Positions 1-61,661 of a stretch of DNA of 64,000 nt are shown piece by piece. The stretch covers positions 14,771,480-14,835,479 of the forward strand of contig CM121342.1 in NCBI GenBank assembly GCA_051530055.1, written 5' to 3'. The notes below the pieces were generated by a model, which was not told the DNA's origin, did no database searches, and was given only the letters and a program-made list of their open reading frames with translations. The DNA is from Neoechinorhynchus agilis. Taxonomy: Eukaryota; Animalia; Acanthocephala. The position numbers and the translations under genes are program-made. Each line of letters begins with the position of its first letter. Position 1 is the stretch's first letter.

Positions 1-1100
1 CTGGTATTATAGAAGGAGCTAAGGACGGAAAAGGACGTGGACGTCAAGTTATTGGAGGTGAGTGGAGATTTAGAGTATTTCTTACAGTTTTTGTCTCGAT
101 TTGAACAGTTGCAAGAACATGTAGTCTTATATTCCTAGTCCTTGATGTCATGAAACCACTAACGCATAAACGAATTATTGAAAAGGAACTGGAAGGATAC
201 GGAATTCGGTTAAATAAACAACCACCGAATATATTCTTTAAAAAGAAAGAGAAAGGCGGTGTTAACTTCCAGAGTATGGTATTTTTGTTCTCTTTGGCGG
301 ATTAACTTGTTTATTATTATTGTCTAGGATACCAATTGTACTTTGGACGTGGAAACCGTTAAAAGTGTCCTAGCTGAGTACAAAATTCACAACGCTGATG
401 TTTTTGTGAAATGTAATGCAGAAATCGATGACCTCATTGATGTAGCTAAGAATTCTCGTTGATTTTTGCGCGATCTGTCCCACTTTCGCATTAAATATAG
501 TTATAGTGCTTTTTTAAGTCCGAGCCTCCCAAATGAGAATTGTAAAGCGTAATCGAGGGTAACCGACGATATATCCCTGCTATTTACGTGCTTAATAAAA
601 TCGACCAGATTTCAATAGAGGTTTGCTATAGAAATTTAATTTCTATTTACTTTATCGAAGCAGGAATTGGACATTATATCTAAAATCCCACATTGTGTCC
701 CGATATCGGCGCACAATAAATGGAATTTCGACGACCTTCTTGAACTGATGTGGAAAGATTTAAATCTCGTCAGAGTGTAAAGCTTAAACTTTGTCTATCA
801 TTTCCAAAATTGCATTTCCTTTAGGTACACTAAACCAAAAGGTCAATTGCCCGATTACGGCAATCCCGTGGTTTTAAAAGCGGACGCATGCACGGTTGAG
901 CACTTTTGCAACAAAATCCATCGACAAATGATTAAACAATTCAAATCGTAAGTGGTTCCTCGAGCTGCTGTGATACATTCGAATCGATTTGTTTATTTAG
1001 AGCACTCGTGTGGGGGAATTCTGCTAAGTTTAATCCTCAAAGTGTGGGAAAGGATCACGTTCTTATGGACGAAGATGTAGTTCAAGTTATTAAAAAATGA
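1..1100 (+). CDS. DRG1: Developmentally regulated GTP-binding protein 1, multi-exon, 5' end outside window
   Basis: Spliced translation [19 protein letters not shown]|[42 protein letters not shown]...YKIHNADV...[29 protein letters not shown]|ELD...[11 protein letters not shown]...[14 protein letters not shown] (TGA 1098-1100) matches known DRG1 motifs. GT-AG introns e.g. 58-108 and 279-327. One anomalous junction at 442-548. Confidence 0.93.
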
Positions 1101-1309
1101 TCTTTCAAAAACGAAATGTCTGTTGATAGTTTCGAGGCTAATTTAATAAGACTGAACCAATTGAAATATTCAAATATTAACAGAGGATTATATTTTGTTA
1201 GTTATGTTAATTCTGGTATTCTCTCTCAAAGAAGCCATAAAGAACCATTTGTAAGATTAGGACACATTTTTAAAAACAAAAACGAATTAAAAATTTTATT
1301 GCCTAAAAA

Positions 1310-2196
1310 TTAATGCGATTTTCCCCATGGAACGTCCTTCAAAATATTCGCAACAACTGCATCCACTGGGTCGCAATAACGGTCGTTTTCATTTCCTCTA
1401 GCCGAACACTCGTCCTTCAATCTACTTTCCGTCCTTTCTTTGTTCTCCGATACGACTTGACATTTGCACACTATACTTGGTGCCGCGAATCGATCCATCG
1501 GATTATCCAGTTGAAATTTACGCTTAGGAACGTGCCACAGAACAGACCATCGGTTTTGTCGGACATTCGCCTTTTCCTTTAATCCTTTCTGTCTAGCAGT
1601 TCGATTAATTGTATGATCTCGGATTATTAACGGAATCACGAACACCACACAAAGTACGTAAAGAAATAGCGAAAATGCAGGTTTTACTTCCGAAAGAGTT
1701 TCTTCGATTTCTGTACAAGAAACGGACATGACCGCATCATTGTTTCCTAGATCGACAGTGCCATTTGGTGATTTAGTCAGCAGCATAAGGCACAATCGAT
1801 AATTATCGAGATTCTGACAAGAAAGATGATTACTAAATCGAAATGTTGACGCGTAATTCTCCATTACTTGTATTTTTATATTTTTGACCTCTAAATCCTG
1901 GTAATACACCACCATTCCTAGATTATCGGTTGTGTTGGCTATCGCAGGCGGCAAATATACATTGCAAATAATGTCCTTGATTCCATCAAATCAATCGGTC
2001 TTCATTTTTTATCAAGACCGATTGCCTTATGAAAACAGCAGGTCAAACTCACTTTCAAATCTGCGTCACTCGGAATTTCCTTTGGTGCTTCTGTTACATC
2101 GACAATCTTCGTTCTGTTACCTTTCTCCATACTGAGTGCTGATAATTGAACTGGAAAAATAAGTACAATGATTATTGTAAGCGATGTTAGTTTCAT
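1310..2196 (-). CDS. Uncharacterised single-pass membrane protein (signal peptide, ectodomain, TM, tail), probably 2 exons
   Basis: ATG at 2196 gives MKLTSLTIIIVLIFPVQLSA (signal-like), followed by a GTGAGT donor after ...DADLK. The 214-aa ORF 1310-1954 has a hydrophobic segment AFSLFLYVLCVVFVIPLII. No family recognised; the splice acceptor is inferred. Confidence 0.55.
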
Positions 2197-2399
2197 TGCT
2201 TTGGTTTGGGGATTTTGCACAAAGAACGATGTGTACACGGTCGACTCCTCCAAGGTGAGTTTTCTAAGAGATACATAAGCGTTGAGGATTTTGTTGAAAT
2301 GTTTTATTGTTCATTTTCGATTTTAAGCTCAAGATTAGTCTTCTTTGTGCGAATTCTTTATCGATTGTCTGAAGCAACGGAGCTGCTGTAGAGTCTAAA

Positions 2400-3060
2400 A
2401 TCCGAAAGCTCAAATGCTGTAGCGATTGATGTCACTGCTATTTGTTAGCAAGATTCTAGTTGGCCCTCTCCTTAACTTCTAACGAAATCACACACATAAA
2501 AGATTTCTGCAACAATCACAAACTCCAGTTGAACATCTCTAAATGTTTCAAGGTGATCCTTCATTCTCCCGCAACTCCGTATCCTACCCAGAGCTTCTAA
2601 ATGACATCCGGCGAAATACCTCCCTCAGAATTCTGGGTCTCCAATTTCAATCAAACTTGAAATGGGACTCGCATATCACTCTTTCCCATCAAACGCAATA
2701 CCTTTAAAATTTATATCCACAAACGCCTCCGACATTTAGGAATCCTTTCGCCCGACCCCTACAAATTCTACTTCTGCTTTATCTTACCATCCCTCAACTA
2801 CGGTTACCCCGTCAAATCGCTAATCCGCCGTCTTGAAATTCCGCACAAAAGAGCATCTAAAATTTGCACAACTTACTTTCCCCCCTCACCGAATGCCTTG
2901 ATGCTATTTTCATAAAACAATCAAAACGCCTCTCAACCCTACCACCACAATTTTTACCACATATCGCCCCCCCCCTGCACAATACTCGTAATCCTAATTC
3001 GTTTCATCCTTCCTTGACTTCGCACCTCCCCAATGTCCAATCTTCTAGGATATCGTAAAC
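2400..3060 (+). mobile_element. Degenerate non-LTR retrotransposon (CR1/L2/jockey-like) RT C-terminal fragment
   Basis: Interrupted frames encode IKDFCNNHKLQLNISKC, ILGLQFQSNLKWDSHI, FILPSLNYGYPV and LEIPHKRASK, the typical post-RT motifs of LINEs. Stops and frameshifts present. Confidence 0.7.
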
Positions 3061-3361
3061 TGAAATGAATTGAAGGAAAGACCGACCTCACAAGCTCTCC
3101 TGCAAACAATATTCGACAATCTCCATCAGAACGGACATCCCCCGACCGGATATTCTCAAACGAACGGACATCACCCTACAAGATAGTCCCACCTGGCCGA
3201 ACCCATAATCCACTCAAAAATCAACAAGCGCATGTTTTTAAGAACCCAAAGGTACATGGGTCTAATTTCTTAAGCAACAAATAAACGGGTTATTATTATA
3301 AGGTCTCGAAATCATTAGCTACAATAGAGGGTTTAATCAAAGCTCCAATACTGAAATAAAG

Positions 3362-3536
3362 GCCCGGATTTTATTTGTCATTAAAATCGATTTTCGGAAT
3401 GATATTTATTTCAAAATTTATCTGTAGCACATTGCAGGGGTCTGAATGTCTGCACCTTGAAAAAAATTATTCATTTTTTATCGAAGCCAAAACGATCAAT
3501 GATAAAAACTTGTTGAAACCCGGATAAAATCCGAGC
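3362..3536. repeat. Imperfect inverted repeat, MITE-like
   Basis: gcccggattttat (3362-3374) vs ataaaatccgagc (3524-3536), 12/13 complementary, with weaker inner pairing. Confidence 0.45.
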
Positions 3537-4009
3537 AACTGAAGTCTAACAGTCATTATATCATGTTTTAGTTTAAATCGATTTTTTTGAAAACGTTCGT
3601 GATCAATGGTTTTAAAATAAACTGCAATTTGTCAAAAAACTTGTTTGGTTGATCGAATATTTTGACCGCTTTATGTTCAAAATAAAGCTTATATTGATCG
3701 ATGATATTTTTTCAACTTTAGCAAGGATCAATTTCTTAAATCATTTAGCCGCCAGAATCAACAACCTTAATCATCTTTACCATGATGCCGATGCCATTCA
3801 AAGCGAATCAATAAGTACGGTGCAGGGAGTGAAGCGCCTGGATCATGAGTGGCAACGCTTTGGGTTTTTTGCAATATATATAGCTAAATACATTTCAAAC
3901 CAAATTCCTCATATGGTTTAATAGCTCGAAATAAATTAACATTGTTTAATAACCATGCATTTCTAATACGTTTTTTTTGTAAATATCAGAAAATTAAACA
4001 TAAAACTTT

Positions 4010-4295
4010 ATTGTACGTTGGCTAATCCGGTCCCCGGTGTTATCGATACTACTTTATTTATTTGGTAAATATTTCGCAAGGTTTTCCTTGCCTCTTTAGT
4101 CGCTATCTAAAATGGAGACAATATAAACAGCATGCACAGCCGGTCATTTCTGGATGTAGCTCAGATCTGCGGGGCTGTTCATATCGTCTCCATTATAGAT
4201 AGCGACTGAGTAGGCAAAGAAAACCTTGCGAAATATTTCTCAAATAAATAAAGGAGTAACGACAACACCAGGGACGGGATTCGCCAACGTACAAT
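4010..4295. repeat. Long foldback: about 120-bp inverted arms, 42-nt spacer
   Basis: 4010-4131 aligns to the reverse complement of 4174-4295 with about 15 mismatches (manual alignment). Confidence 0.9.
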
Positions 4296-5623
4296 CAAAT
4301 TTACCCTGAGGACAATGATATATGACAATAAAACTTTATTCATATTTGTAACATCCCTTCCTCGGCTTTTTAGTTTTTGCTTCTTGGCATGAAGCCACAC
4401 CGATCTCTTACATCAGAGAAGTGATTGAATTACTTAGACTCATATGTATGTGGTAATGAGTCTGTACATCCCTCAGGATTCTCAGATACCCCCGGAGGGG
4501 GCGGAACTTACCATAGCGACATTTCATCACCTCTCTAAAGTAAGAAGAGATCGGTGTGACTTCATGCCAAGAAGGAAAACTAAAAAAACAGAGGAAGGGA
4601 TGTCTTAAATACGAATCAATAGAACCGACTTGCGGGTAAAAAAGATTTAATAAATCGTTTTGTTGAGCGGTAACAACCAGAAACAAAAATCAATGGTCGT
4701 ATAGAGTTTTTGGGTTGATGTTCCGTTCTCTGTCAGTTACCAGTGGCCAGTTAACGAATTGACAAATCCGATATAAGAAAATGATGTTCCATAGGATCGT
4801 GAAACTACACAAAATGCGGAAAAAATGAATTTGCAATCGAATTTTTTTTAATCACATTTCCTAAGTTGGATGCTAATTCCGAAGAAAAGAAAATCATAGT
4901 AATTTCTTGCTAAAGTTTCTATCATATCAAAATTAGCAACTAATTATTTCTACAAAAAGACCGTTATTCTCAAGGAATATTGCTCAATATTTTTGATTCT
5001 ACAAATGAAAATCCTTTGTGTGTTTATTGTTTTGAAATACTGAACTTAGAACATTGCTCCCAGTACTCGAACGTAAAAATTTAGGTTGTGCAATGCCGAC
5101 TAATCCATCTGCGTTTAGTACGACGTAGCTTCTTTAAAAACGTTCGATTTAATAATAATTTAATACAGACATGTGTGATCCTGATCTAATCTAATTTTTG
5201 CAACCATTTGTTCATCTTGTTGACTAATCCAACTTTTTCTGGTTGCTCGAGAAATGGTGTATTTTGTAGTAGGACCTCACCGAATGTATACCGCTGTTCG
5301 TGTAGACGACCGCGACTAAAAAGATTAGGGCTGAAATAAGTCAATTTTCCAAATTTGGAATTGCTTTTTAAAAATTCCGTTATAGTTTCAACGCAGAAAG
5401 TGAGATCGCTTCTTTGTGCAATTGTTCAAGTTTTCCAAAAACAAAAACAGTGACCAAGTATTCAAGTGCTCAAAGGCCGAGTTTGAAGCATCGATGGAAT
5501 GGTTTCCGCTCTACTCGTTTCTCCGAACGCGAATATGAATTTAGAAAATGCACTTCTATCGAACCCATGCCCAAAAAACTCTCAAAGAAGCATTAAAGGT
5601 TAAAACTTCACTGGCATTAACGA

Positions 5624-5929
5624 TTAGTCGTATTTTGCTCCGGGTCTTCCTCTGAATCTATATCTCATGTCCAACTAAGGATTTTTCCATAATCAATCGG
5701 CTTTAAAAGTTATACTCACCATTCCACGTTTACACTGGAAAAAAGCGTCGAGGAGACGAAAGCAAAAGTCGGGGACATGGTCTCGCATAGCGACATCGCG
5801 GATACAATCCCGTGGAAGTCTATGGTGAACTTTAACGCAATCAGAATCCATAAGGCACTTCTTTAAGTCAACGCGAAGTTGATGACAAGCAATCGGAAAG
5901 CCCAATGGGCTTTTATCTTCCAGTCCCAT
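5624..5929 (-). CDS. COA5: Cytochrome c oxidase assembly factor 5 (PET191 family), 2 exons
   Basis: Cys pattern ACHQLRVDLKKCLMDSDCV...DC...C..LLDAFFQCKRGM, then GTGAGT intron, then LDMRYRFRGRPGAKYD* (stop 5624-5626), matching the PET191 C-terminal LD.R.RFRG motif. Confidence 0.9.
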
Positions 5930-7388: not shown

Positions 7389-8253
7389 TCAATTTTCCTG
7401 TTTCCAAAATCCCTTTCCTCGTCCTTGTGTGAAAATGATTTCCTGTCCTTTGCAAACTGCAATCCCCTTAGTCAGATTGAATTTCCACCAGCCGCTTGAA
7501 CGATTCAACTTATTGACTTCAGCGATAATGTAATTTCTGCAACGTGAATCTTTTGTCGTCTCGGTCAATTCACTTTCCGAAGTTTCATCATCGTCGTTTG
7601 AATTGAGAGGCTCCGGATCCTCCACTGGAGATTCAAGAGGCGGATCCTCACTGATTATCTCATCCAAGTTTACTCCCATGCTTCCATATTGTCCAAGACG
7701 TAATGATATCTGATTTTTTGTTACCTTCTTCATACTGTTGGAGCTTGAATCGCTATCATCACTTTCAGGAAAGCGATGGCGGTTATCGGTAGAATCTTCG
7801 CTGTCTTCATCCGAAATTCCACAAAACGCATTTTGACCTACAATCGTCATTCTAAGTTTCTTACCCATTGACGATTTGCGTTTATTATTCTCAATCACAG
7901 GTTTAATATAACCAGGCTCAAATTCACATTCTAATTCCGAAGCAACTCTGTATTGTTCCCAAGTCTATAAATCGTAGAAAAAATCGTTTCAAACGCTCAA
8001 CATAAATGGATAGCTAACCTTCTGAACACGATCAAATATAGACTGGTTTAGGCCTCTTTTCCTAAACTGCCGGATCAGTCGACAAAGCGTCTTAGAAACC
8101 ACGAGTCCGTTCAATTTGCGCTAAAGTATTACGAATTAAGGTGGATTGGTTCAATTGCGACTTAATGAATTCCATTACCAGCTCATCGCTATCGAAGGAA
8201 CAATCCGGTTCGTATGGAAAGTCATGGATACCCAAGCTTGCAATTGGTTTCAT
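7389..8253 (-). CDS. GTF2A1: Divergent transcription initiation factor IIA large subunit (alpha/beta), about 3 exons
   Basis: C-terminus EPLNSNDDD...NYIIAEVNKLNRSSGWWKFNLTKGIAVCKGQEIIFTQGRGKGFW matches the TFIIA beta-sheet pattern (PLNS.DD...V....K..R....WKF.L..G.......F......W). Upstream exons give RKLNGLVVSKTLCRLIRQFRKRGLNQSIFDRVQK|TWEQ, resembling the N-terminal helices. Start codon uncertain. Confidence 0.7.
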
Positions 8254-8530
8254 TGATGTTATAGACTAAAAAGGAATCGTGTGCGCTAAAATCGAAACTA
8301 GTTAGAAAGGAGTCTTTTTTAACATTTAAACTCCGTTACGTTCCGAATAAGTTACTTTGGATTTGAGCATACATTTTTCATCAATCGCTTCAAATTGTTG
8401 ACCGATTGCCGAAAGATGTTTTTATAAACACTCATACATGACAACTATATAGACAACCAAAAACTCTTTGATAATGTTTTAATTCATTAAAGTTTACACC
8501 AATGAGACGACATTCGCTGTTTTAATCTGG

Positions 8531-8889: not shown

Positions 8890-8990
8890 TAAAGAAGTTG
8901 TTCATTTATATATGTGTTCTTTGGTGATGAGAACAATAGATATTGATTTATTGTTCTCAATATTTCGTCCGTCGGACTTCTTCAGGTTGC
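8890..8990 (-). ncRNA. Hammerhead-like motif, family B (Penelope pLTR-like repeat)
   Basis: Minus strand CUGAAGA-A-GUCC(gac)GGAC-GAAAUAUU, followed by hairpin UGAGAACAAUA...UAUUGUUCUCA and the family tail tgaacaacttctttaca. Stem I poorly paired. Confidence 0.6.
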
Positions 8991-9512
8991 TTGTAATTTT
9001 TTCTTAATTGTTCCAATGTGCACTTAAATATCTCAAGGCTTTCGGCATCGAAACCTATTTACAAGGAGTGATTGGAGTTTTTGAGCACAACACTTTAACA
9101 GTTTCAATTCATAAACCGAATAATTGCTATTTATGAATCCTTTTATTTAATGAAGGGTCTGATGAAAATGACCTCCTTATTTGTACGAACCGAACTTTGT
9201 AAATGATTTTTGTTAGTGTGAATTTAAAAATGGTAGCTAACGAAATGATGATGAAGAACGCCTGATTATTTGTTTGAAAAGTCCATTGTTTTCAGAATCT
9301 TCATTGCTAATAAACAGGTTAGTGATCTATCACTTTGTCAGAAATCATAAAACAAATAGCCTCTTCTGAAACTTATGTATAAAAATAAGGGGAGCAAATG
9401 AAAAAATCAGCACACGAAGCGTTTTTTGTCTTCGAGATCGCATTTAAAACTTTCGGTTTCTATAAATGCCATCTCCAAATTAATTTACGAATTTTTTTCT
9501 CAAGCTTTATTC

Positions 9513-10997
9513 TTACTTCAGCTGTTCTAGAGGTTCTCGCTCAATTGGTAAAGTCATGCAATGCGGACCTCCTCTTGCCCTCGATATTTCTGACGATGGA
9601 AGCACAATCACAGTGCGTTCAATTTCATTTGGTTTTAGACCTTCATCGAATCGTGTAAGTAATTCGGCTGCATGTAAGGCTTTGAACCCACGTTTTTTGA
9701 AAGCTTCAATGGTTTTTCGGTTCCGGTCGTACATGAAAATTACTCCTTCTTTGACAGCAAAAGTGTTGCAACCGTCGGTCCACTGTTCGCGCCAATTGTC
9801 TGGGAATTCGTCGTCGGCACAAAATACTACATCGAAATTTTTGCTCTTCAAATCATCCTGACTAACACTTTTTAAAAGATCAAAAATATAATCGAACCCA
9901 CGCATTTGCACCGTCCCAGTTTTTGGATCGATAAAATGTTGTTCGGCTTTAAAAGGCAGCTTAGTTAGTACTTCAGGATAATGTGCCGAATGAGTTCGGG
10001 TTCTACCGGTCCTCGGATTTCCGTTAATCGTAACATCGTTGCCGTTTCTGACTAGTTCCCGATTGGCCAACGGGCCGAATATGATCCAAAGACCGCGTTC
10101 AGCTTGAGTCAGTAGCGTGTCGAGGTGCATACAGTACCGGCTTTTTGGAAGGAAGATAAGCGACACTTTCTCCACAACTTCACGTTCAAATAACTCTCGT
10201 ACGATTGAACGTGCGGCTGCGAGAGTAGTTCGTTCGCTTATTCCAATTAAGAGATGATTCGGTGCAACCATCATAAAATCGCCTCCTTCCATTGTGATTT
10301 GTTCCTCGACCTCATCGGTGCCTTCCGATAAAAATGAATTGGCTTGTTCGGTCCATATAACTTTATCCCGCTGTTTTTCAAAAAACGGATGATGCTTAAC
10401 AATAAAATGAAAGATCACAGTTTCCCGCCTTCGTGCCAATTTAGCTGGTTGACAGATTATAATGTGATCGTTAACGAAAACAGCAATGTCTCTGACCATA
10501 ATAAGGTTTGGAATCGGTCTGAACAATATTTCTCCATCTCGCGAACAACCACTGAGGAGAGTTCGAGCGAGTTGCCTGTCTGAATAAACGTTTAAGAAGT
10601 CGTCGTACAATGTATGAGAAATTCCTTCACTTGCCAGAATCCAGTTTAAAAGAGAGACGCGGTTTTCCCGAACTCCAAGAACGTCTTGCAGCAACCAGCC
10701 AACATCTACGAGTTTATCAGAGCGGAAATAGTGTTCGGAGAAAGGATTAGCATAATCCGTTCGGGAACGACCTGCGTCCTGTTCTTGCTTAAGAAATCGG
10801 GCATGGTCCTCGTCCAGAAAAAAGAGGAGGATTCTCGTAAAAAGAGAATATTCCTTATCCCGAGCAGCATTGACGTCTATAATATCCTCAAATAAGCATT
10901 CCTGTGCCTTGAGTGGAATCATCTTTTCGATGCTCTCATCCAATCCGTGGATAAACAATCTTTTGAGCTTGGCTACTTCACTGCTAATGGAAGTCAT
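9513..10997 (-). CDS. arcA: Arginine deiminase, bacterial type, intronless (494 aa from ATG 10997)
   Basis: All ADI motifs present: SSEVAKLKRL..H, PNLIMVRD, ARRRET, EGGD, IGISERT, MHLDT, EQWTDGCN, YDRN and SEISRARGGPHCMTLP with the catalytic Cys. The N-terminal KAQECLFEDII...KEY...LLFFLD block and the insert before SSEISR resemble Bacteroidota ADIs as I recall them. Confidence 0.95.
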   Translation of the reverse strand: MTSISSEVAKLKRLFIHGLDESIEKMIPLKAQECLFEDIIDVNAARDKEYSLFTRILLFFLDEDHARFLKQEQDAGRSRTDYANPFSEHYFRSDKLVDVGWLLQDVLGVRENRVSLLNWILASEGISHTLYDDFLNVYSDRQLARTLLSGCSRDGEILFRPIPNLIMVRDIAVFVNDHIIICQPAKLARRRETVIFHFIVKHHPFFEKQRDKVIWTEQANSFLSEGTDEVEEQITMEGGDFMMVAPNHLLIGISERTTLAAARSIVRELFEREVVEKVSLIFLPKSRYCMHLDTLLTQAERGLWIIFGPLANRELVRNGNDVTINGNPRTGRTRTHSAHYPEVLTKLPFKAEQHFIDPKTGTVQMRGFDYIFDLLKSVSQDDLKSKNFDVVFCADDEFPDNWREQWTDGCNTFAVKEGVIFMYDRNRKTIEAFKKRGFKALHAAELLTRFDEGLKPNEIERTVIVLPSSEISRARGGPHCMTLPIEREPLEQLK

Positions 10998-12244
10998 TGT
11001 CTCGGTTAGTCTGTAATTTAAGATCGTCGTATGAGTTTTAGCTGCTGCGTTGGCTGCAGAAAAACCATGAAAGGTAAATAAATGGAACGAACGCTTATTA
11101 TCATGAGCAGTCAGTGGAAAAACATAAAAAATCCTCTTTATGTTCGGCATAAACCAAGGCTCGTGTCATTACTCTGCATCAAGTGACATTTTTGCTGGTA
11201 TATGGATCTAGCGAATAAATATGGAGTGGTGTATACTGTGCAAAAATCATGTGCAAGACCCAATAGAATTTTTAATGGAAAAAAATCGTTGCCGGAACCA
11301 TCTTTAGACTGTTAAGCATATACAAGCCACCTCATTAAAAATTAAAAAATCATAATGGTTAAGAAATTCTTTGCTTTTTTAAAGCTTACACGTGTAACGA
11401 ATTTTCTGTACTTCTAGAGATGGGAAATGTACGAATAAATTAAAAGTGGAAAACTTTAACAAGAAAATTTGTCATTTTTATAGAATAGAGTCTATAATAT
11501 GTACTAGTTTCTAACAGAGAAGCTAATACTTAACCGAAATCTTCTCGAGGACTTATATGCGAACGTGTAGGAGCTTTGACAAATGTGTCGACCTAAAAGA
11601 GAACCCCTCGTCACCATATACCTTGTTTTTTTGAGTGAATGTGTGTGGATTTTAGGTGTAAAAACTGACTCACTCTATTTGATATGTCAGCAGTTTTGGT
11701 TGGGTTTTTATCGAATGCGTAAAGGGTGTTTGTTACGCTCATGTCGTCTAGGTATTTTTAAGGCAAGAGGGTGGGATATTACCAAAAAATGTTCAAAACT
11801 CCCTTTCCCTTGGGTGCCCGATTGGGTCAATGTGAAAAAGCAGAAATGCAATCATGAGCCTCAGAAATGCGAAGTCACGAAAAAACTAATAATTTTCGAA
11901 TAAATTGATGTTAATTGATAAATCCGAGTAGAGCAGGTGTCGAAAAGTGCTTGCTAGGCGAACGAAGTGATGAAAGTGCTGAGAAATTCAGAACGTAAAC
12001 GTGCCATGACACTCAAATTTATGGACGAATTGCTGACTTTGACACACACTTCTCATTCAGGTATTAAGTGCAAGGCCTTCCCTCCCTACGGTTATGCAGT
12101 CTTTTGAAACCTGTCCAAATCACAAACTCGTCGCCTTGAAACGTTTCATAGAAGAGTTCCTAAACTTCGTTACAGCTAACTTTCCCCTTTTCACTGAATG
12201 GTTTCGTAAAATTTTCACTAAACAATCAAAAGGCCTCCCTTTTT

Positions 12245-13682
12245 CAATACTGCCCAATCTTTTCTTGTATAATAACCAGAAACGAACCGAAGGAAGGGCC
12301 CAACCTCATAAACTCTCCTTTAAATAATAATAATCACCAACTTTCTCACTTGATCGCACCCGTAATTCATTGCGAAATTAACATCAACATTCATTTAACC
12401 TATTCAGAACTTGAGTTTTCCCGAGAACCAAAAGGTACATTAATCCTCTTCTTTGTTCAATAATAAAACGTTTTATTATTATATTGCCAAATCTTTTCTT
12501 GTATAATAACCAGAAACGAACCAAAGGAAAGACCCAACCTCATAAACTCTCCTTCAAATAATAATCACCAACTTTCTCACTTGATCGGACCCGTAATTCA
12601 TTGCGAAATTAACATCAACATTCATTTAACCTGTTCAGAACTCGAGTTTTCGCAAGAACCCAAAGGTACATTGATCCTCTTCTTTCTTCAATAATAAAAC
12701 GTTTTATTATTATATTGCCAAATCTTTTCTTGTATAATTACCAGAAACGAACCAAAGGAAAGACCCAACCTCATAAACTCTCCTTTAAATAATAATCACC
12801 AACTTTCTCACTTGATCCGAACCGAAGGAAAGGCCCAACCTCATAAACTCTCCTTTAAATAATAATAATCACCAACTTTCTCACTTGATCGCACCCGTAA
12901 TTCATTGCGAAATTAACATCAACATTCATTTAACCTATTCAGAACTCGAGTTTTCCCGAGAACCAAAAGGTACATTAATCCTCTTCTTTGTACAATAATA
13001 AAACGTTTTATTATTATATTGCCAAATCTTTTCTTGTATTATAACCAGAAACGAACCAAAGGAAAGACCCAACCTCATAAACTCTCCTTTAAACAATAAT
13101 CACCAACTTTCTCACTTGATCGGACCCGTAATCCACTCCGAAATTAACATCAACATTCATTTAACCTGTTCGGAACTCGAGTTTTCCCGAGAACCCAAAG
13201 GTACATTGATCCTCTTCTTTGTTCAATAATAAAACGTTTTAGTATTATATTGCCCAATCGTTTCTTGTATAATAACCAGAAACGAACCAAAGGAAAGACC
13301 CAACCTCATAAACTCTCCTTAAAAAATAATAATCACCAACTTTCTCACTTGATCGGACCCGTAATTCATTGCGAAATTAACATCAACATTCATTTAACCT
13401 GTTCAGAACTCGAGTTTTCGCAAGAACCCAAAGGTACATTGATCCTCTTCTTTCTTCAATAATAAAACGTTTTATTATTATACTGCTCAATCTTTTCTTG
13501 TATAATTACCAGAAACGAACCAAAGGAAAGACCCAACCTCATAAACTCTCCTTTAAATAATAATCACCAACTTTCTCACTTGATCCGACCCGTAATTCAC
13601 TCCAAAATCTTCGAATTTTTAAGATGACCCAAAGGTACATGGATCCTCTTATTTGTTCAATAATAAAACGTGTTATTATAAA
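12245..13682 (+). repeat. Tandem satellite, about 231-bp unit, about 6 copies
   Basis: Unit anchor cc(a/c)aatc at 12487, 12718, 13022 and 13253. Partial internal duplication near 12820. Most units carry the 22-bp palindrome AATAATAAAACGTTTTATTATT. Confidence 0.95.
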
Positions 13683-61489: not shown

Positions 61490-61661
61490 TGTTGGTGTTG
61501 ATAATTTATTTTAAAATATTTCGTAAGTTTTTTGCTTACCTCTTCAGTTATATTGCTTGTAAGTATCAAATATGTGGGTTATTTGAAACTTACAAGCAAT
61601 ATAACTGAAGAGGTAAGCAAAAAGCTTACGAAATATTTTAAATAAATGATCAACACCAACA
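61490..61661. repeat. Near-perfect long hairpin: about 83-bp arms, about 7-nt loop
   Basis: 61490-61572 vs reverse complement of 61580-61661 differ at about 4 positions, including one indel. Confidence 0.92.

What the first reader, a model, noticed from the sequence alone, without database searches (positions are those of the whole stretch)
9513..10997. Bacterial-type arginine deiminase embedded in an animal genome: horizontal gene transfer candidate
Seen: a full-length, stop-free, intronless ADI with intact catalytic Asp/His/Cys motifs. Its flanks are eukaryotic (intron-bearing TFIIA, hammerhead repeats, satellite shared with another locus), no arcB/arcC/arcD operon partners are nearby, and a TTACAG acceptor-like site lies 13 nt before the ATG. 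Established: ADI (Arg to citrulline + NH3) is the first step of the arginine dihydrolase pathway, used for anaerobic ATP generation, acid resistance and host-arginine/NO depletion in bacteria, Giardia and Trichomonas; animals generally lack it. Inference: a domesticated gene from a Bacteroidota-like donor, possibly supporting a parasitic or hypoxic lifestyle.
Basis: partly seen in the sequence, partly recalled or inferred. Interest (0 to 1): 0.8.

Follow-up and report, generated by a model that had tools for sequence, protein, structure and literature searches.

The report
Bacterial arginine deiminase domesticated in thorny-headed worm
An intact, transcribed and spliced gene for a bacterial-type arginine-degrading enzyme sits in a chromosome of the fish gut parasite Neoechinorhynchus agilis, acquired from a Bacteroidota-like bacterium before thorny-headed worm lineages split; animals are otherwise not known to have this enzyme.

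Summary
On the minus strand, 10997-9516 encodes a 494-aa arginine deiminase (ADI) family protein. Every family-invariant catalytic and substrate-binding residue is present, and the predicted fold matches ADI. The window is Neoechinorhynchus agilis (Acanthocephala); the gene is NCBI's 'hypothetical protein ACOME3_008189' on a 16.4-Mb scaffold.

RNA-type contigs from four worm samples cover the gene. In three runs they skip a 462-nt GT..AG intron (9516-9055). That intron removes the ORF's own TAA and adds six codons, so the gene is not intronless. One contig carries a 25-nt leader, absent from the window, joined at the TTACAG acceptor 13 nt before the ATG.

In the tree, N. agilis, an unnamed metagenomic sequence and Pomphorhynchus laevis form one clade (100/99). 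That clade is sister to the ~480-aa ADI family of Bacteroidota. A bdelloid rotifer copy is a separate, recent capture (AU p 0.005).

In 70 of 80 bacterial loci the gene sits beside ctlX (putative citrullinase). The worm kept ADI alone.

Contamination is excluded. Enzyme activity and physiological role are inferred. The 'hammerhead repeats' were not confirmed.

The scan already reported a second, broken ADI copy 1.35 Mb away (s1-037817).

The parts
11011..11655 (-). Transcribed region upstream of the acceptor (outron or unspliced 5' UTR). It contains the in-frame upstream ATG at 11150 that the NCBI model uses.
   Evidence: Collinear contigs reach 11580-11655 in X1, X3 and X4. In X2 this stretch has depth 21 and 9, against 1445 for the coding body. 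The 51-aa extension has no Pfam match and is absent from P0002, P. laevis and the bacterial homologues.
11011..11016 (-). TTACAG 3' splice acceptor, 13 nt before the ATG.
   Evidence: Sequence. An X2 contig carries 25 loose letters beginning exactly at 11010/11011, and the high-depth X2 contig ends at 11010.
9517..11010 (-). Exon 1. It holds a 13-nt 5' UTR, the ATG at 10997-10995 and the ADI coding body up to the first two bases of the Lys494 codon.
   Evidence: ORF. PF02274. RNA-type contigs at depth about 700-5400 in four runs. AF2 model pLDDT 86 with best PDB matches all ADI.
9055..9516 (-). A 462-nt GT..AG spliceosomal intron that removes the ancestral TAA stop (9515-9513).
   Evidence: Joint 9052/9515, 'skips 462, CT..AC (cut +2)', in X1, X2 and X3 at contig depths 856-2200. 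GTAAGA donor and AG acceptor read. The NCBI model P0001 ends ...LEQLKFRCRKP.
8944..9054 (-). Exon 2. It holds the last base of Lys494, then FRCRKP, then stop TGA at 9035-9033, then 3' UTR with AATAAA at 8952-8947. The 3' end is not mapped.
   Evidence: Contig pieces 8944-9052 joined to 9515 onward; sequence. Many loose ends at 8913-9002 show that this stretch overlaps a repeated, expressed element.
12247..13608 (.). A 231-bp satellite array upstream of the gene. This is context only; no role is shown.
   Evidence: Tandem Repeats Finder.
7392..8285 (-). Neighbouring host gene: TFIIA large subunit, with short introns. It proves a eukaryotic flank.
   Evidence: PF03153 E 5e-8 on the last exon. 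RNA joints 7964/8019 and 8120/8179 with CT..AC ends.

Best explanation
This is a functional, horizontally acquired arginine deiminase-family gene of the acanthocephalan Neoechinorhynchus agilis. A bacterium of, or near, the phylum Bacteroidota donated a long-form (~480 aa) ADI gene to an ancestor of at least the Eoacanthocephala (N. agilis) and the Palaeacanthocephala (Pomphorhynchus laevis). In bacteria this gene normally sits directly upstream of ctlX, a putative citrullinase. Only the ADI gene is seen in the worms. It was domesticated in three ways. Its base composition now matches host coding DNA. A spliceosomal intron arose at the very end of the ORF, replacing the bacterial stop with six new codons and a host 3' UTR. 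A splice acceptor 13 nt before the ATG receives a short leader encoded elsewhere, most likely a trans-spliced leader, so translation most likely starts at the bacterial-type N-terminus (M at 10997). Inferred mechanism: Cys480 attacks the guanidino carbon of free L-arginine, which is held by Asp170 and Asp293 (guanidinium) and by Arg189, Arg256 and Arg475 (carboxylate). His291 and Glu237 act as the general base, releasing ammonia and then L-citrulline. Shown here: genomic integration, transcription, splicing, phylogenetic position, residue conservation and predicted fold. Inferred: enzyme activity, substrate, cytosolic location and physiological role (arginine catabolism or ammonia production in a gut parasite, possibly host arginine depletion).
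For: Identity and integration. The ORF is 100% identical to N. agilis ACOME3_008189 on a 16,375,937-bp contig. TFIIA with spliced mini-introns and PET191 lie within 1-4 kb. GC3 is 0.40, inside the 0.31-0.44 range of other long ORFs in the window. Expression and processing. Four runs of one study give contigs over 9515-11650 at depth hundreds to thousands, against 2-6 in the flanks. A GT..AG joint of 462 nt appears in three runs. A leader is joined at 11010 and is not encoded in the window. Family. PF02274 scores 186.5 bits. PDB ADIs match at E 1e-29. The AF2 model has pTM 0.88, its top 26 Foldseek hits are all ADI (TMt up to 0.84, E 4e-30), and the next family scores 1e-10. All 53 invariant columns of a 38-sequence alignment are kept, including equivalents of P. 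aeruginosa D166, R185, E224, R243, H278, D280, R401 and C406. The two Asp that distinguish guanidino-acting enzymes from CtlX are kept (PMC9007349). Phylogeny. The best 80 genome loci carry Bacteroidota labels, apart from two MAGs labelled Roseobacteraceae/Thalassobius. In the careful ML tree the acanthocephalan clade has 100/99 support, is sister to 38 bacterial long-form sequences (100/99; one row is the MAG titled Roseobacteraceae and ten metagenomic rows are unnamed), and together they have 100/100 support against short-form ADIs. A profile of the three acanthocephalan sequences finds nothing between 835 and 488 bits among the candidates that a word-prefiltered search of the 5.8-billion-protein collection scored. 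The bdelloid copy is 75% identical to Cytophagaceae proteins, and joining it with the acanthocephalans is rejected (AU p 0.005). Literature. ADI was not detected in Metazoa in a eukaryote-wide survey (PMC5052871).
Against: No enzyme assay exists. The protein scores far below NCBI's arcA equivalog cut-off (197 against 489 bits), as do its bacterial relatives, so the whole long-form subfamily is biochemically uncharacterised. Acanthocephalans changed pocket-adjacent positions (PNLIFTRD to PNLIMVRD; FPYG to FPDNW), which could alter specificity. The runs are only guessed to be RNA, and they are contigs, so depth is a poor measure. The leader rests on one contig in one run, while three runs assemble collinearly through the acceptor. 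No synteny supports orthology with P. laevis within 10 kb either side. The acanthocephalan clade is a long branch next to the outgroup, so its 'sister' position may be long-branch attraction and the donor cannot be named. Protist ADIs were not in the tree. Downstream enzymes (OTC, carbamate kinase, CtlX) were not found or could not be searched genome-wide.
Confidence: 0.82

Rival explanations
1. The gene is bacterial contamination or a chimeric join in the assembly, not part of the worm genome.
For: The closest named relatives are almost all labelled Bacteroidota, and the coding body has no internal intron.
Against: It is at most 45% identical to any bacterial protein. It lies on a 16.4-Mb scaffold between spliced host genes. 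The transcript carries a GT..AG intron and a non-collinear leader. Its composition is host-like. An orthologue sits on an AT-rich 97-kb P. laevis contig.
Confidence: 0.01
2. The gene is real and expressed but no longer acts on free arginine. It has been neofunctionalised to another guanidino substrate (agmatine, methylarginines, peptidyl-arginine) or to a non-catalytic role.
For: It scores far below the arcA equivalog cut-off. Lineage-specific substitutions lie next to the substrate-pocket motifs, and a lineage-specific insert of low pLDDT lies at about residues 315-345. The bacterial partner ctlX is lost.
Against: All residues that bind the alpha-carboxylate and the guanidinium of L-arginine in solved ADIs are retained, as is the Cys-His-Glu set. 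The three acanthocephalan sequences share 69% mean column identity with these sites invariant, which indicates purifying selection on a catalytic protein.
Confidence: 0.12
3. N. agilis and P. laevis acquired the gene independently, or the gene is an ancient eukaryotic ADI inherited vertically and lost from almost all other animals.
For: N. agilis is as distant from P. laevis (45%) as from bacteria (44-45%). No shared synteny was found. The clade is not nested inside the sampled bacteria.
Against: The three sequences are monophyletic at 100/99 and share derived motifs that every bacterial sequence in the 12-row alignment lacks (CMHLDT, FPDNWREQWTDGCN, PN[LI]IM[VA]RD). No other eukaryote appears in the top 120 of three searches except one bdelloid copy nested in Cytophagales. 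A published survey found no metazoan ADI (PMC5052871).
Confidence: 0.05

Closest known systems
Long-form (~470-490 aa) 'arginine deiminase family protein' of Bacteroidota (Cytophagales, Chitinophagales, Sphingobacteriales), e.g. Limibacter armeniacum P0004, Flectobacillus major P0013
   Same: It has the same length class and the same inserts relative to ~410-aa ArcA. Identity is 38-45% over 98-99% of the length. All invariant residues are shared. The two form one 100/100 clade against short-form ADIs.
   Different: The bacterial genes are followed by ctlX in 70 of 80 loci; the worm gene stands alone. The worm gene has an intron, a leader acceptor and a new C-terminal hexapeptide. The worm proteins carry lineage-specific substitutions beside the active-site motifs.
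Canonical arginine deiminase ArcA (EC 3.5.3.6): P. aeruginosa 1RXX/2A9G, S. pyogenes 4BOF, Mycoplasma arginini 1LXY
   Same: It shares the fold (TMt 0.75-0.84) and the catalytic and substrate-binding residues.
   Different: Identity is only 20-23%. The worm protein is about 80 residues longer. It falls below the TIGR01078 and NF002381 cut-offs. There is no arcB/arcC/arcD context.
ADI of anaerobic gut protists (Giardia, Trichomonas) and other eukaryotes surveyed by Novak et al. 2016 (PMC5052871)
   Same: A bacterial-type ADI in a eukaryote living in a low-oxygen gut.
   Different: Those organisms have the full ADI-OTC-CK pathway. No such protein appears among the nearest 120 hits, so the worm gene is a different, independent acquisition. 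Membership of that eukaryotic clade was not tested in a tree.
ADI of the bdelloid rotifer Didymodactylos carnosus (P0080)
   Same: It is also an intronless Bacteroidota-type long-form ADI in a syndermatan genome, flanked by eukaryotic genes (O-FucT, and RPL4 with introns).
   Different: It is 75% identical to Cytophagaceae proteins and nested within Cytophagales, so it is a separate and much more recent transfer.
Second ADI copy of N. agilis, 1.35 Mb beyond this window (earlier scan note s1-037817)
   Same: Same genome, chromosome and family. The earlier agent also concluded that the transfer was ancient and shared with other acanthocephalans.
   Different: That copy is reported as interrupted by two mobile-element inserts and as having lost conserved residues. 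The copy here is intact, expressed and spliced. I could not read that DNA.

Membership tests
Arginine deiminase family (Pfam PF02274, guanidino-group modifying enzyme superfamily) | Significant match to the family profile above the curated cut-off | tested here: met
   186.5 bits against a cut-off of 22.8, E 1e-54.
Arginine deiminase family (Pfam PF02274, guanidino-group modifying enzyme superfamily) | Catalytic Cys nucleophile, His and Glu, plus two guanidinium-binding Asp | tested here: met
   C480, H291, E237, D170 and D293 align with P. aeruginosa C406, H278, E224, D166 and D280. All are invariant in 38 sequences.
Arginine deiminase family (Pfam PF02274, guanidino-group modifying enzyme superfamily) | Arg residues that bind the alpha-carboxylate of free L-arginine | tested here: met
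   R189, R256 and R475 correspond to R185, R243 and R401.
Arginine deiminase family (Pfam PF02274, guanidino-group modifying enzyme superfamily) | ADI fold (alpha/beta propeller with inserted helical domain) | tested here: met
   AF2 model pLDDT 86, pTM 0.88. The top 26 PDB matches are all ADI, with TMt up to 0.84.
Arginine deiminase family (Pfam PF02274, guanidino-group modifying enzyme superfamily) | Hydrolysis of L-arginine to L-citrulline and ammonia | not testable with these tools
   This needs recombinant protein and a citrulline or ammonia assay.
Canonical ArcA / arginine dihydrolase (ADI-OTC-CK) pathway | Score above the NCBIfam arcA equivalog cut-off | tested here: not met
   TIGR01078 scores 196.7 against 489.1, and NF002381 scores 213.9 against 414. 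The same holds for the bacterial long-form relatives.
Canonical ArcA / arginine dihydrolase (ADI-OTC-CK) pathway | Partner genes arcB (OTC) and arcC (carbamate kinase) present | tested here: inconclusive
   None was noticed beside the gene. Bacterial relatives pair with ctlX instead. A genome-wide search of N. agilis was not possible, and the earlier-findings index has no note on carbamate kinase.
Horizontally transferred gene fixed in an animal genome | Physical linkage to undoubted host genes | tested here: met
   It lies on a 16.4-Mb scaffold. TFIIA with spliced introns begins about 650 bp from the mapped end of ADI exon 2, and PET191 lies 3 kb away.
Horizontally transferred gene fixed in an animal genome | Phylogeny groups it with non-animal sequences, and it is absent from other animals | tested here: met
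   Tree, searches, loci, survey PMC5052871. Caveat: it is sister to, not nested in, the sampled Bacteroidota, and protist ADIs were not included.
Horizontally transferred gene fixed in an animal genome | Expression with eukaryotic mRNA processing | tested here: met
   A 462-nt GT..AG intron is spliced out in three runs, and a leader is joined at the acceptor in one run. The runs are only guessed to be RNA, but the junctions argue that they are.
Horizontally transferred gene fixed in an animal genome | Orthologue in a related host species (vertical inheritance after transfer) | tested here: met
   P. laevis GJ496_003789 lies on a 97-kb, 35% GC contig and is monophyletic with N. agilis at 100/99.
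Spliced-leader trans-splicing target | The same short leader, encoded by a separate SL RNA gene, is found on many unrelated mRNAs | not tested
   Only one 25-nt loose end at 11010 in run X2 was seen. The leader is absent from the window. Earlier scan notes report leaders on other genes, but their sequences could not be compared.

The most novel reading that the evidence does not exclude
ADI is a lineage-defining acquisition of Acanthocephala that gave these gutless intestinal parasites a new way to use absorbed arginine. It could serve as an ammonia or energy source, or it could starve the host mucosa of the substrate for nitric oxide, as Giardia does. It would then be a parasite-specific enzyme absent from fish and other vertebrate hosts, and so a candidate drug target. 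The stop-removing 3' intron and the leader acceptor would document step by step how a bacterial ORF becomes an animal gene.
Probability: 0.25. Interest if true: 0.75.

Novelty: new member of a known kind. Interest (0 to 1): 0.55.

Why it matters
A eukaryote-wide survey found no arginine deiminase in Metazoa (PMC5052871). Here an intact, transcribed and spliced copy is shared by two acanthocephalan classes. It is a clean, datable example of bacterium-to-animal transfer in a strictly sexual parasite, whereas most well-documented syndermatan cases are in asexual bdelloids. It shows concrete domestication steps: the stop codon is replaced by an intron donor, and there is an acceptor for a leader. 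It adds an enzyme that the vertebrate host lacks, relevant to parasite arginine metabolism and possibly to control of an aquaculture pest. It also points to an uncharacterised bacterial ADI-CtlX gene pair (arginine to citrulline to ornithine) that is widespread in Bacteroidota.

Tried and rejected
Contamination or chimera was rejected. A single syndermatan origin with the bdelloid copy was rejected by the tree and the AU test. Synteny between N. agilis and P. laevis: tblastx of window 1-22000 against 10 kb either side of the P. laevis gene found only the ADI itself, which is uninformative. Hammerhead ribozymes: no Rfam hit at gathering score or at E<=0.5. Leader origin: the 25-mer is not in the window at up to 6 mismatches. 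Only its last 12-15 nt (ACTTACAAGCA) recur, in a palindromic element at 61500-61650 and in the 3' exon at 9002-8988; the meaning is unknown. Literature: no paper held names ADI in Acanthocephala. The N. agilis transcriptome paper's one held supplement has no entry for it. Earlier-findings look-ups for carbamate kinase and for leader details gave nothing usable, and the look-up by sequence needs at least 30 bases. The exhaustive representative search was not run. The word-indexed profile search already showed a clean gap (835 to 488 bits), and the exhaustive library has no taxon names.
Full report
**What is there.** On the minus strand an ORF runs from 11150 to 9513 (545 aa). This protein matches Pfam ADI (PF02274) at E 1e-54, 186.5 bits against a cut-off of 22.8. 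It also matches solved arginine deiminases of Pseudomonas, Streptococcus and Mycoplasma at E down to 1.5e-29. It stays far below NCBI's arcA equivalog cut-off (196.7 against 489.1 bits). It is therefore an ADI-family protein but not a canonical ArcA.

**Whose genome.** The word-indexed protein search returns a 100% match to 'hypothetical protein ACOME3_008189 [Neoechinorhynchus agilis]' on a contig of 16,375,937 bases. The window is thus from an acanthocephalan, a thorny-headed worm of mullet intestines (PMC12690905). The next hits are:
- an unnamed MetaClust protein (P0002, 63%);
- Pomphorhynchus laevis GJ496_003789 (P0003, 44%);
- then only bacterial 'arginine deiminase family proteins' of about 480 aa from Cytophagales, Chitinophagales and Sphingobacteriales (38-45%);
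- one bdelloid rotifer protein (Didymodactylos carnosus, 39%).

**Not contamination.**
- A TFIIA large-subunit exon lies at 7392-7898(-) and a PET191 exon at 5696-5929(-), downstream on the same strand.
- ADI GC3 is 0.40, inside the 0.31-0.44 range of the other long ORFs in the window.
- No bacterial protein is more than 45% identical.
- The P. laevis orthologue lies on a 97-kb contig of 35% GC.

**Transcript evidence.** Four runs of one study hold the stretch. The runs are coded and are only guessed to be RNA. Their size (about 19 Mb of contigs each, one sample each) fits the individually sequenced worms described in PMC12690905.
- Contigs of k-mer depth about 700-5400 cover 9515 to about 11650. 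The flanks and the TFIIA gene have depth 2-6. Depth of contigs is a weak measure, and I use it only as evidence of presence.
- Three runs contain a joint from 9052 to 9515 ('skips 462, CT..AC, cut +2').
- Read on the minus strand, this is a GT..AG intron from 9516 to 9055.
- Its GTAAGA donor begins with the last base of the Lys494 codon, so the ORF's own TAA (9515-9513) is spliced out.
- Exon 2 (from 9054) completes the Lys, adds FRCRKP and stops at TGA 9035-9033. An AATAAA lies at 8952-8947.
- This reproduces the C-terminus of the NCBI model (…LEQLKFRCRKP).
- The coding body is therefore intronless, but the gene is not. The intron is also direct proof of eukaryotic expression.
- The same contigs skip short GT..AG introns of 54 and 58 nt in TFIIA.
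- The P. laevis gene ends at its own TAA with no donor, so the intron is specific to the N. agilis lineage.

**The 5' end.**
- In run X2 the high-depth contig (1445) ends exactly at 11010. The collinear upstream contigs have depth 21 and 9.
- One X2 contig continues beyond 11010 with 25 letters that are not in the stretch. In mRNA sense this reads …TCGAATATTTAAAAACTTACAAGCA|ACTAACCGAGACAATG.
- That 25-mer is absent from the window at up to 6 mismatches.
- In X1, X3 and X4 the assembled contigs run collinearly to 11580-11655. Their single mean depths are arithmetically compatible with a high-depth coding part plus a low-depth upstream part, but that is not shown.
- The simplest reading is that most mRNA is spliced at this acceptor to a leader encoded elsewhere.
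- Earlier notes of this scan report acceptors at start codons and non-collinear leaders on other N. agilis genes. I could not compare sequences, so trans-splicing of this mRNA is likely but not demonstrated. A distant cis exon is not excluded.
- If the acceptor is used, the first ATG is 10997. That start aligns with the bacterial N-termini.
- The 51-aa extension in the NCBI model has no family match and is not shared by P0002, P. laevis or bacteria.

**Catalytic competence.** I aligned the protein to P. aeruginosa ADI and to 37 relatives. Every residue named in the titles of the mutant structures and every invariant family column is kept:

| Motif in N. agilis | Residue | P. aeruginosa equivalent |
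|---|---|---|
| MVRD | D170 | D166 |
| ARRRE | R189 | R185 |
| EGGD | E237 | E224 |
| SERT | R256 | R243 |
| MHLDT | H291, D293 | H278, D280 |
| RARGGPHCM | R475, C480 | R401, C406 |

- The two aspartates are those that distinguish guanidino-acting enzymes from the citrulline-acting CtlX, which has Asn at both positions (PMC9007349).
- An AlphaFold2 model built on the alignment has mean pLDDT 86 and pTM 0.88.
- Its 26 best PDB matches are all arginine deiminases (TMt 0.75-0.84, E down to 4e-30). The next family, amidinotransferases, scores 1e-10.
- Low-confidence loops lie at residues 220-230 and 330-339. The second falls in an insert shared only with P0002.
- Acanthocephalan-specific changes lie next to pocket motifs: PNLIFTRD to PNLIMVRD, FPYG to FPDNW, YMHIDT to CMHLDT. 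Altered specificity therefore cannot be excluded.

**Phylogeny.**
- A scan of one genome per prokaryotic species with the family alignment returned 597 confirmed loci. The best 80 all carry Bacteroidota labels except two MAGs labelled Roseobacteraceae/Thalassobius.
- I built a careful IQ-TREE (LG+C20+F+G4 PMSF) on 47 rows. I left out most near-duplicate bacterial rows of the 93-row quick tree and added six short-form (408-423 aa) ADIs as outgroup.
- N. agilis + P0002 has 100/98 support.
- That pair plus P. laevis has 100/99 support.
- This clade is sister to the 38 other long-form rows, nearly all Bacteroidota by title (one MAG is titled Roseobacteraceae; ten are unnamed), at 100/99.
- All long forms together have 100/100 support.
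- The three worm-type sequences also share derived motifs that every bacterial sequence in the 12-row alignment lacks.
- The acanthocephalan branch is long and attaches next to the outgroup, so the basal position may be long-branch attraction. The donor can be called Bacteroidota-like but no more precisely.
- The Didymodactylos gene is 74-75% identical to Cytophagaceae proteins and nested in Cytophagales at 100/98. It lies between eukaryotic O-FucT and an intron-bearing RPL4.
- Forcing the Didymodactylos gene together with the acanthocephalans costs 43 log-likelihood units (AU p 0.005). The hypothesis predated the tree, but the test was run after I had seen it.
- There were thus at least two independent captures of the same bacterial gene family within Syndermata.
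- A profile of the three acanthocephalan sequences finds no further member of their clade among the candidates that the word-prefiltered search of the 5.8-billion-protein collection scored. Scores drop from 835 to 488 bits.

**Bacterial context and what it says about function.**
- In 70 of the 80 bacterial loci a gene of about 305 aa follows the ADI gene on the same strand within about 20-200 bp.
- It is PF19420 and passes NCBI's equivalog cut-off for 'citrulline utilization hydrolase CtlX' (421 and 439 bits against 334).
- CtlX is a genetically supported but biochemically unproven citrullinase (PMC9007349).
- The pair implies arginine to citrulline to ornithine, which supports true ADI activity for the long-form family.
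- No CtlX-like sequence occurs in the window, nor within 10 kb of the P. laevis or Didymodactylos genes.
- The fate of citrulline in the worm is unknown. I could not search the genome for OTC, carbamate kinase, ASS or ASL.

- The satellite is real: 231-bp units at 12247-13608.
- 'Hammerhead repeats' get no Rfam support at any threshold tried. However, exon 2 contains a CTGAAGA…GAAA string and lies in a repeated, expressed element, as many loose ends at 8913-9002 show.

**Known or new.**
- Bulk HGT candidates (4.8% of proteins) were reported for P. laevis without naming ADI in the text (PMC7310846).
- No held paper mentions ADI in Acanthocephala.
- A survey of eukaryotes detected no ADI in Metazoa (PMC5052871).
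- Both worm proteins are deposited as 'hypothetical protein'.
- This scan has already reported a second, apparently decaying ADI copy 1.35 Mb further along the same chromosome, with the same ancient-transfer reading (s1-037817; not checked by me).
- The present copy is the intact, expressed one.

**Verdict.** This is a new member of a known kind: a bacterial metabolic gene domesticated in a syndermatan. It has unusually clear domestication marks. The biochemical role is plausible but untested.

Noticed in passing
window 61500-61650: A near-perfect palindrome of about 130 bp. Its arms contain ACTTACAAGCAATATAACTGAAGAGGTAAGC. The first 11-12 nt match the 3' end of the 25-nt leader seen on the ADI mRNA, and a related string (AAATTACAAGCAACCTGAAGAAG) lies in ADI exon 2 at 8999-8977. 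Rfam gives only sub-threshold miRNA-precursor-like scores, so it is probably a MITE-like hairpin. Whether the leader and these repeats are related is open.
   Followed up: partly
window 8913-9002 (minus strand, ADI exon 2 / 3' UTR): Many contigs of all four runs have loose ends here with differing continuations. The 3' exon created by the new intron therefore lies in a dispersed, expressed repeat, so the intron acceptor and the new stop may have been supplied by a repeat insertion. A CTGAAGA-GTCC-GAC-GGAC-GAAA string resembles a hammerhead core but gets no Rfam hit.
   Followed up: partly
L003-L082 (bacterial loci), about 20-200 bp downstream of the ADI-family gene: A conserved gene pair of long-form ADI-family gene plus ctlX (putative citrullinase) occurs in 70 of 80 Bacteroidota loci. 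It implies an arginine to citrulline to ornithine route without OTC or carbamate kinase. In Flammeovirga and Rapidithrix the pair is absent and PEPCK lies upstream.
   Followed up: partly
L002 10001-11467 (Didymodactylos carnosus): An independent, recent capture of the same bacterial gene family in a bdelloid rotifer. It is 75% identical to Cytophagaceae proteins, has GC3 of 0.21 like its AT-rich flanks, and lies between O-FucT and an intron-bearing RPL4.
   Followed up: partly
window 12247-13608: A 231-bp satellite array starts about 600 bp upstream of the collinear transcript end of the ADI gene. Earlier notes of this scan describe similar arrays upstream of other genes that receive a leader.
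   Followed up: no
window 11000-11150 (minus strand): The NCBI model starts at an upstream in-frame ATG and adds 51 basic, acid-poor residues. These residues would be translated only from transcripts not spliced at 11010. Whether an N-terminally extended (targeted?) isoform exists is unknown.
   Followed up: no
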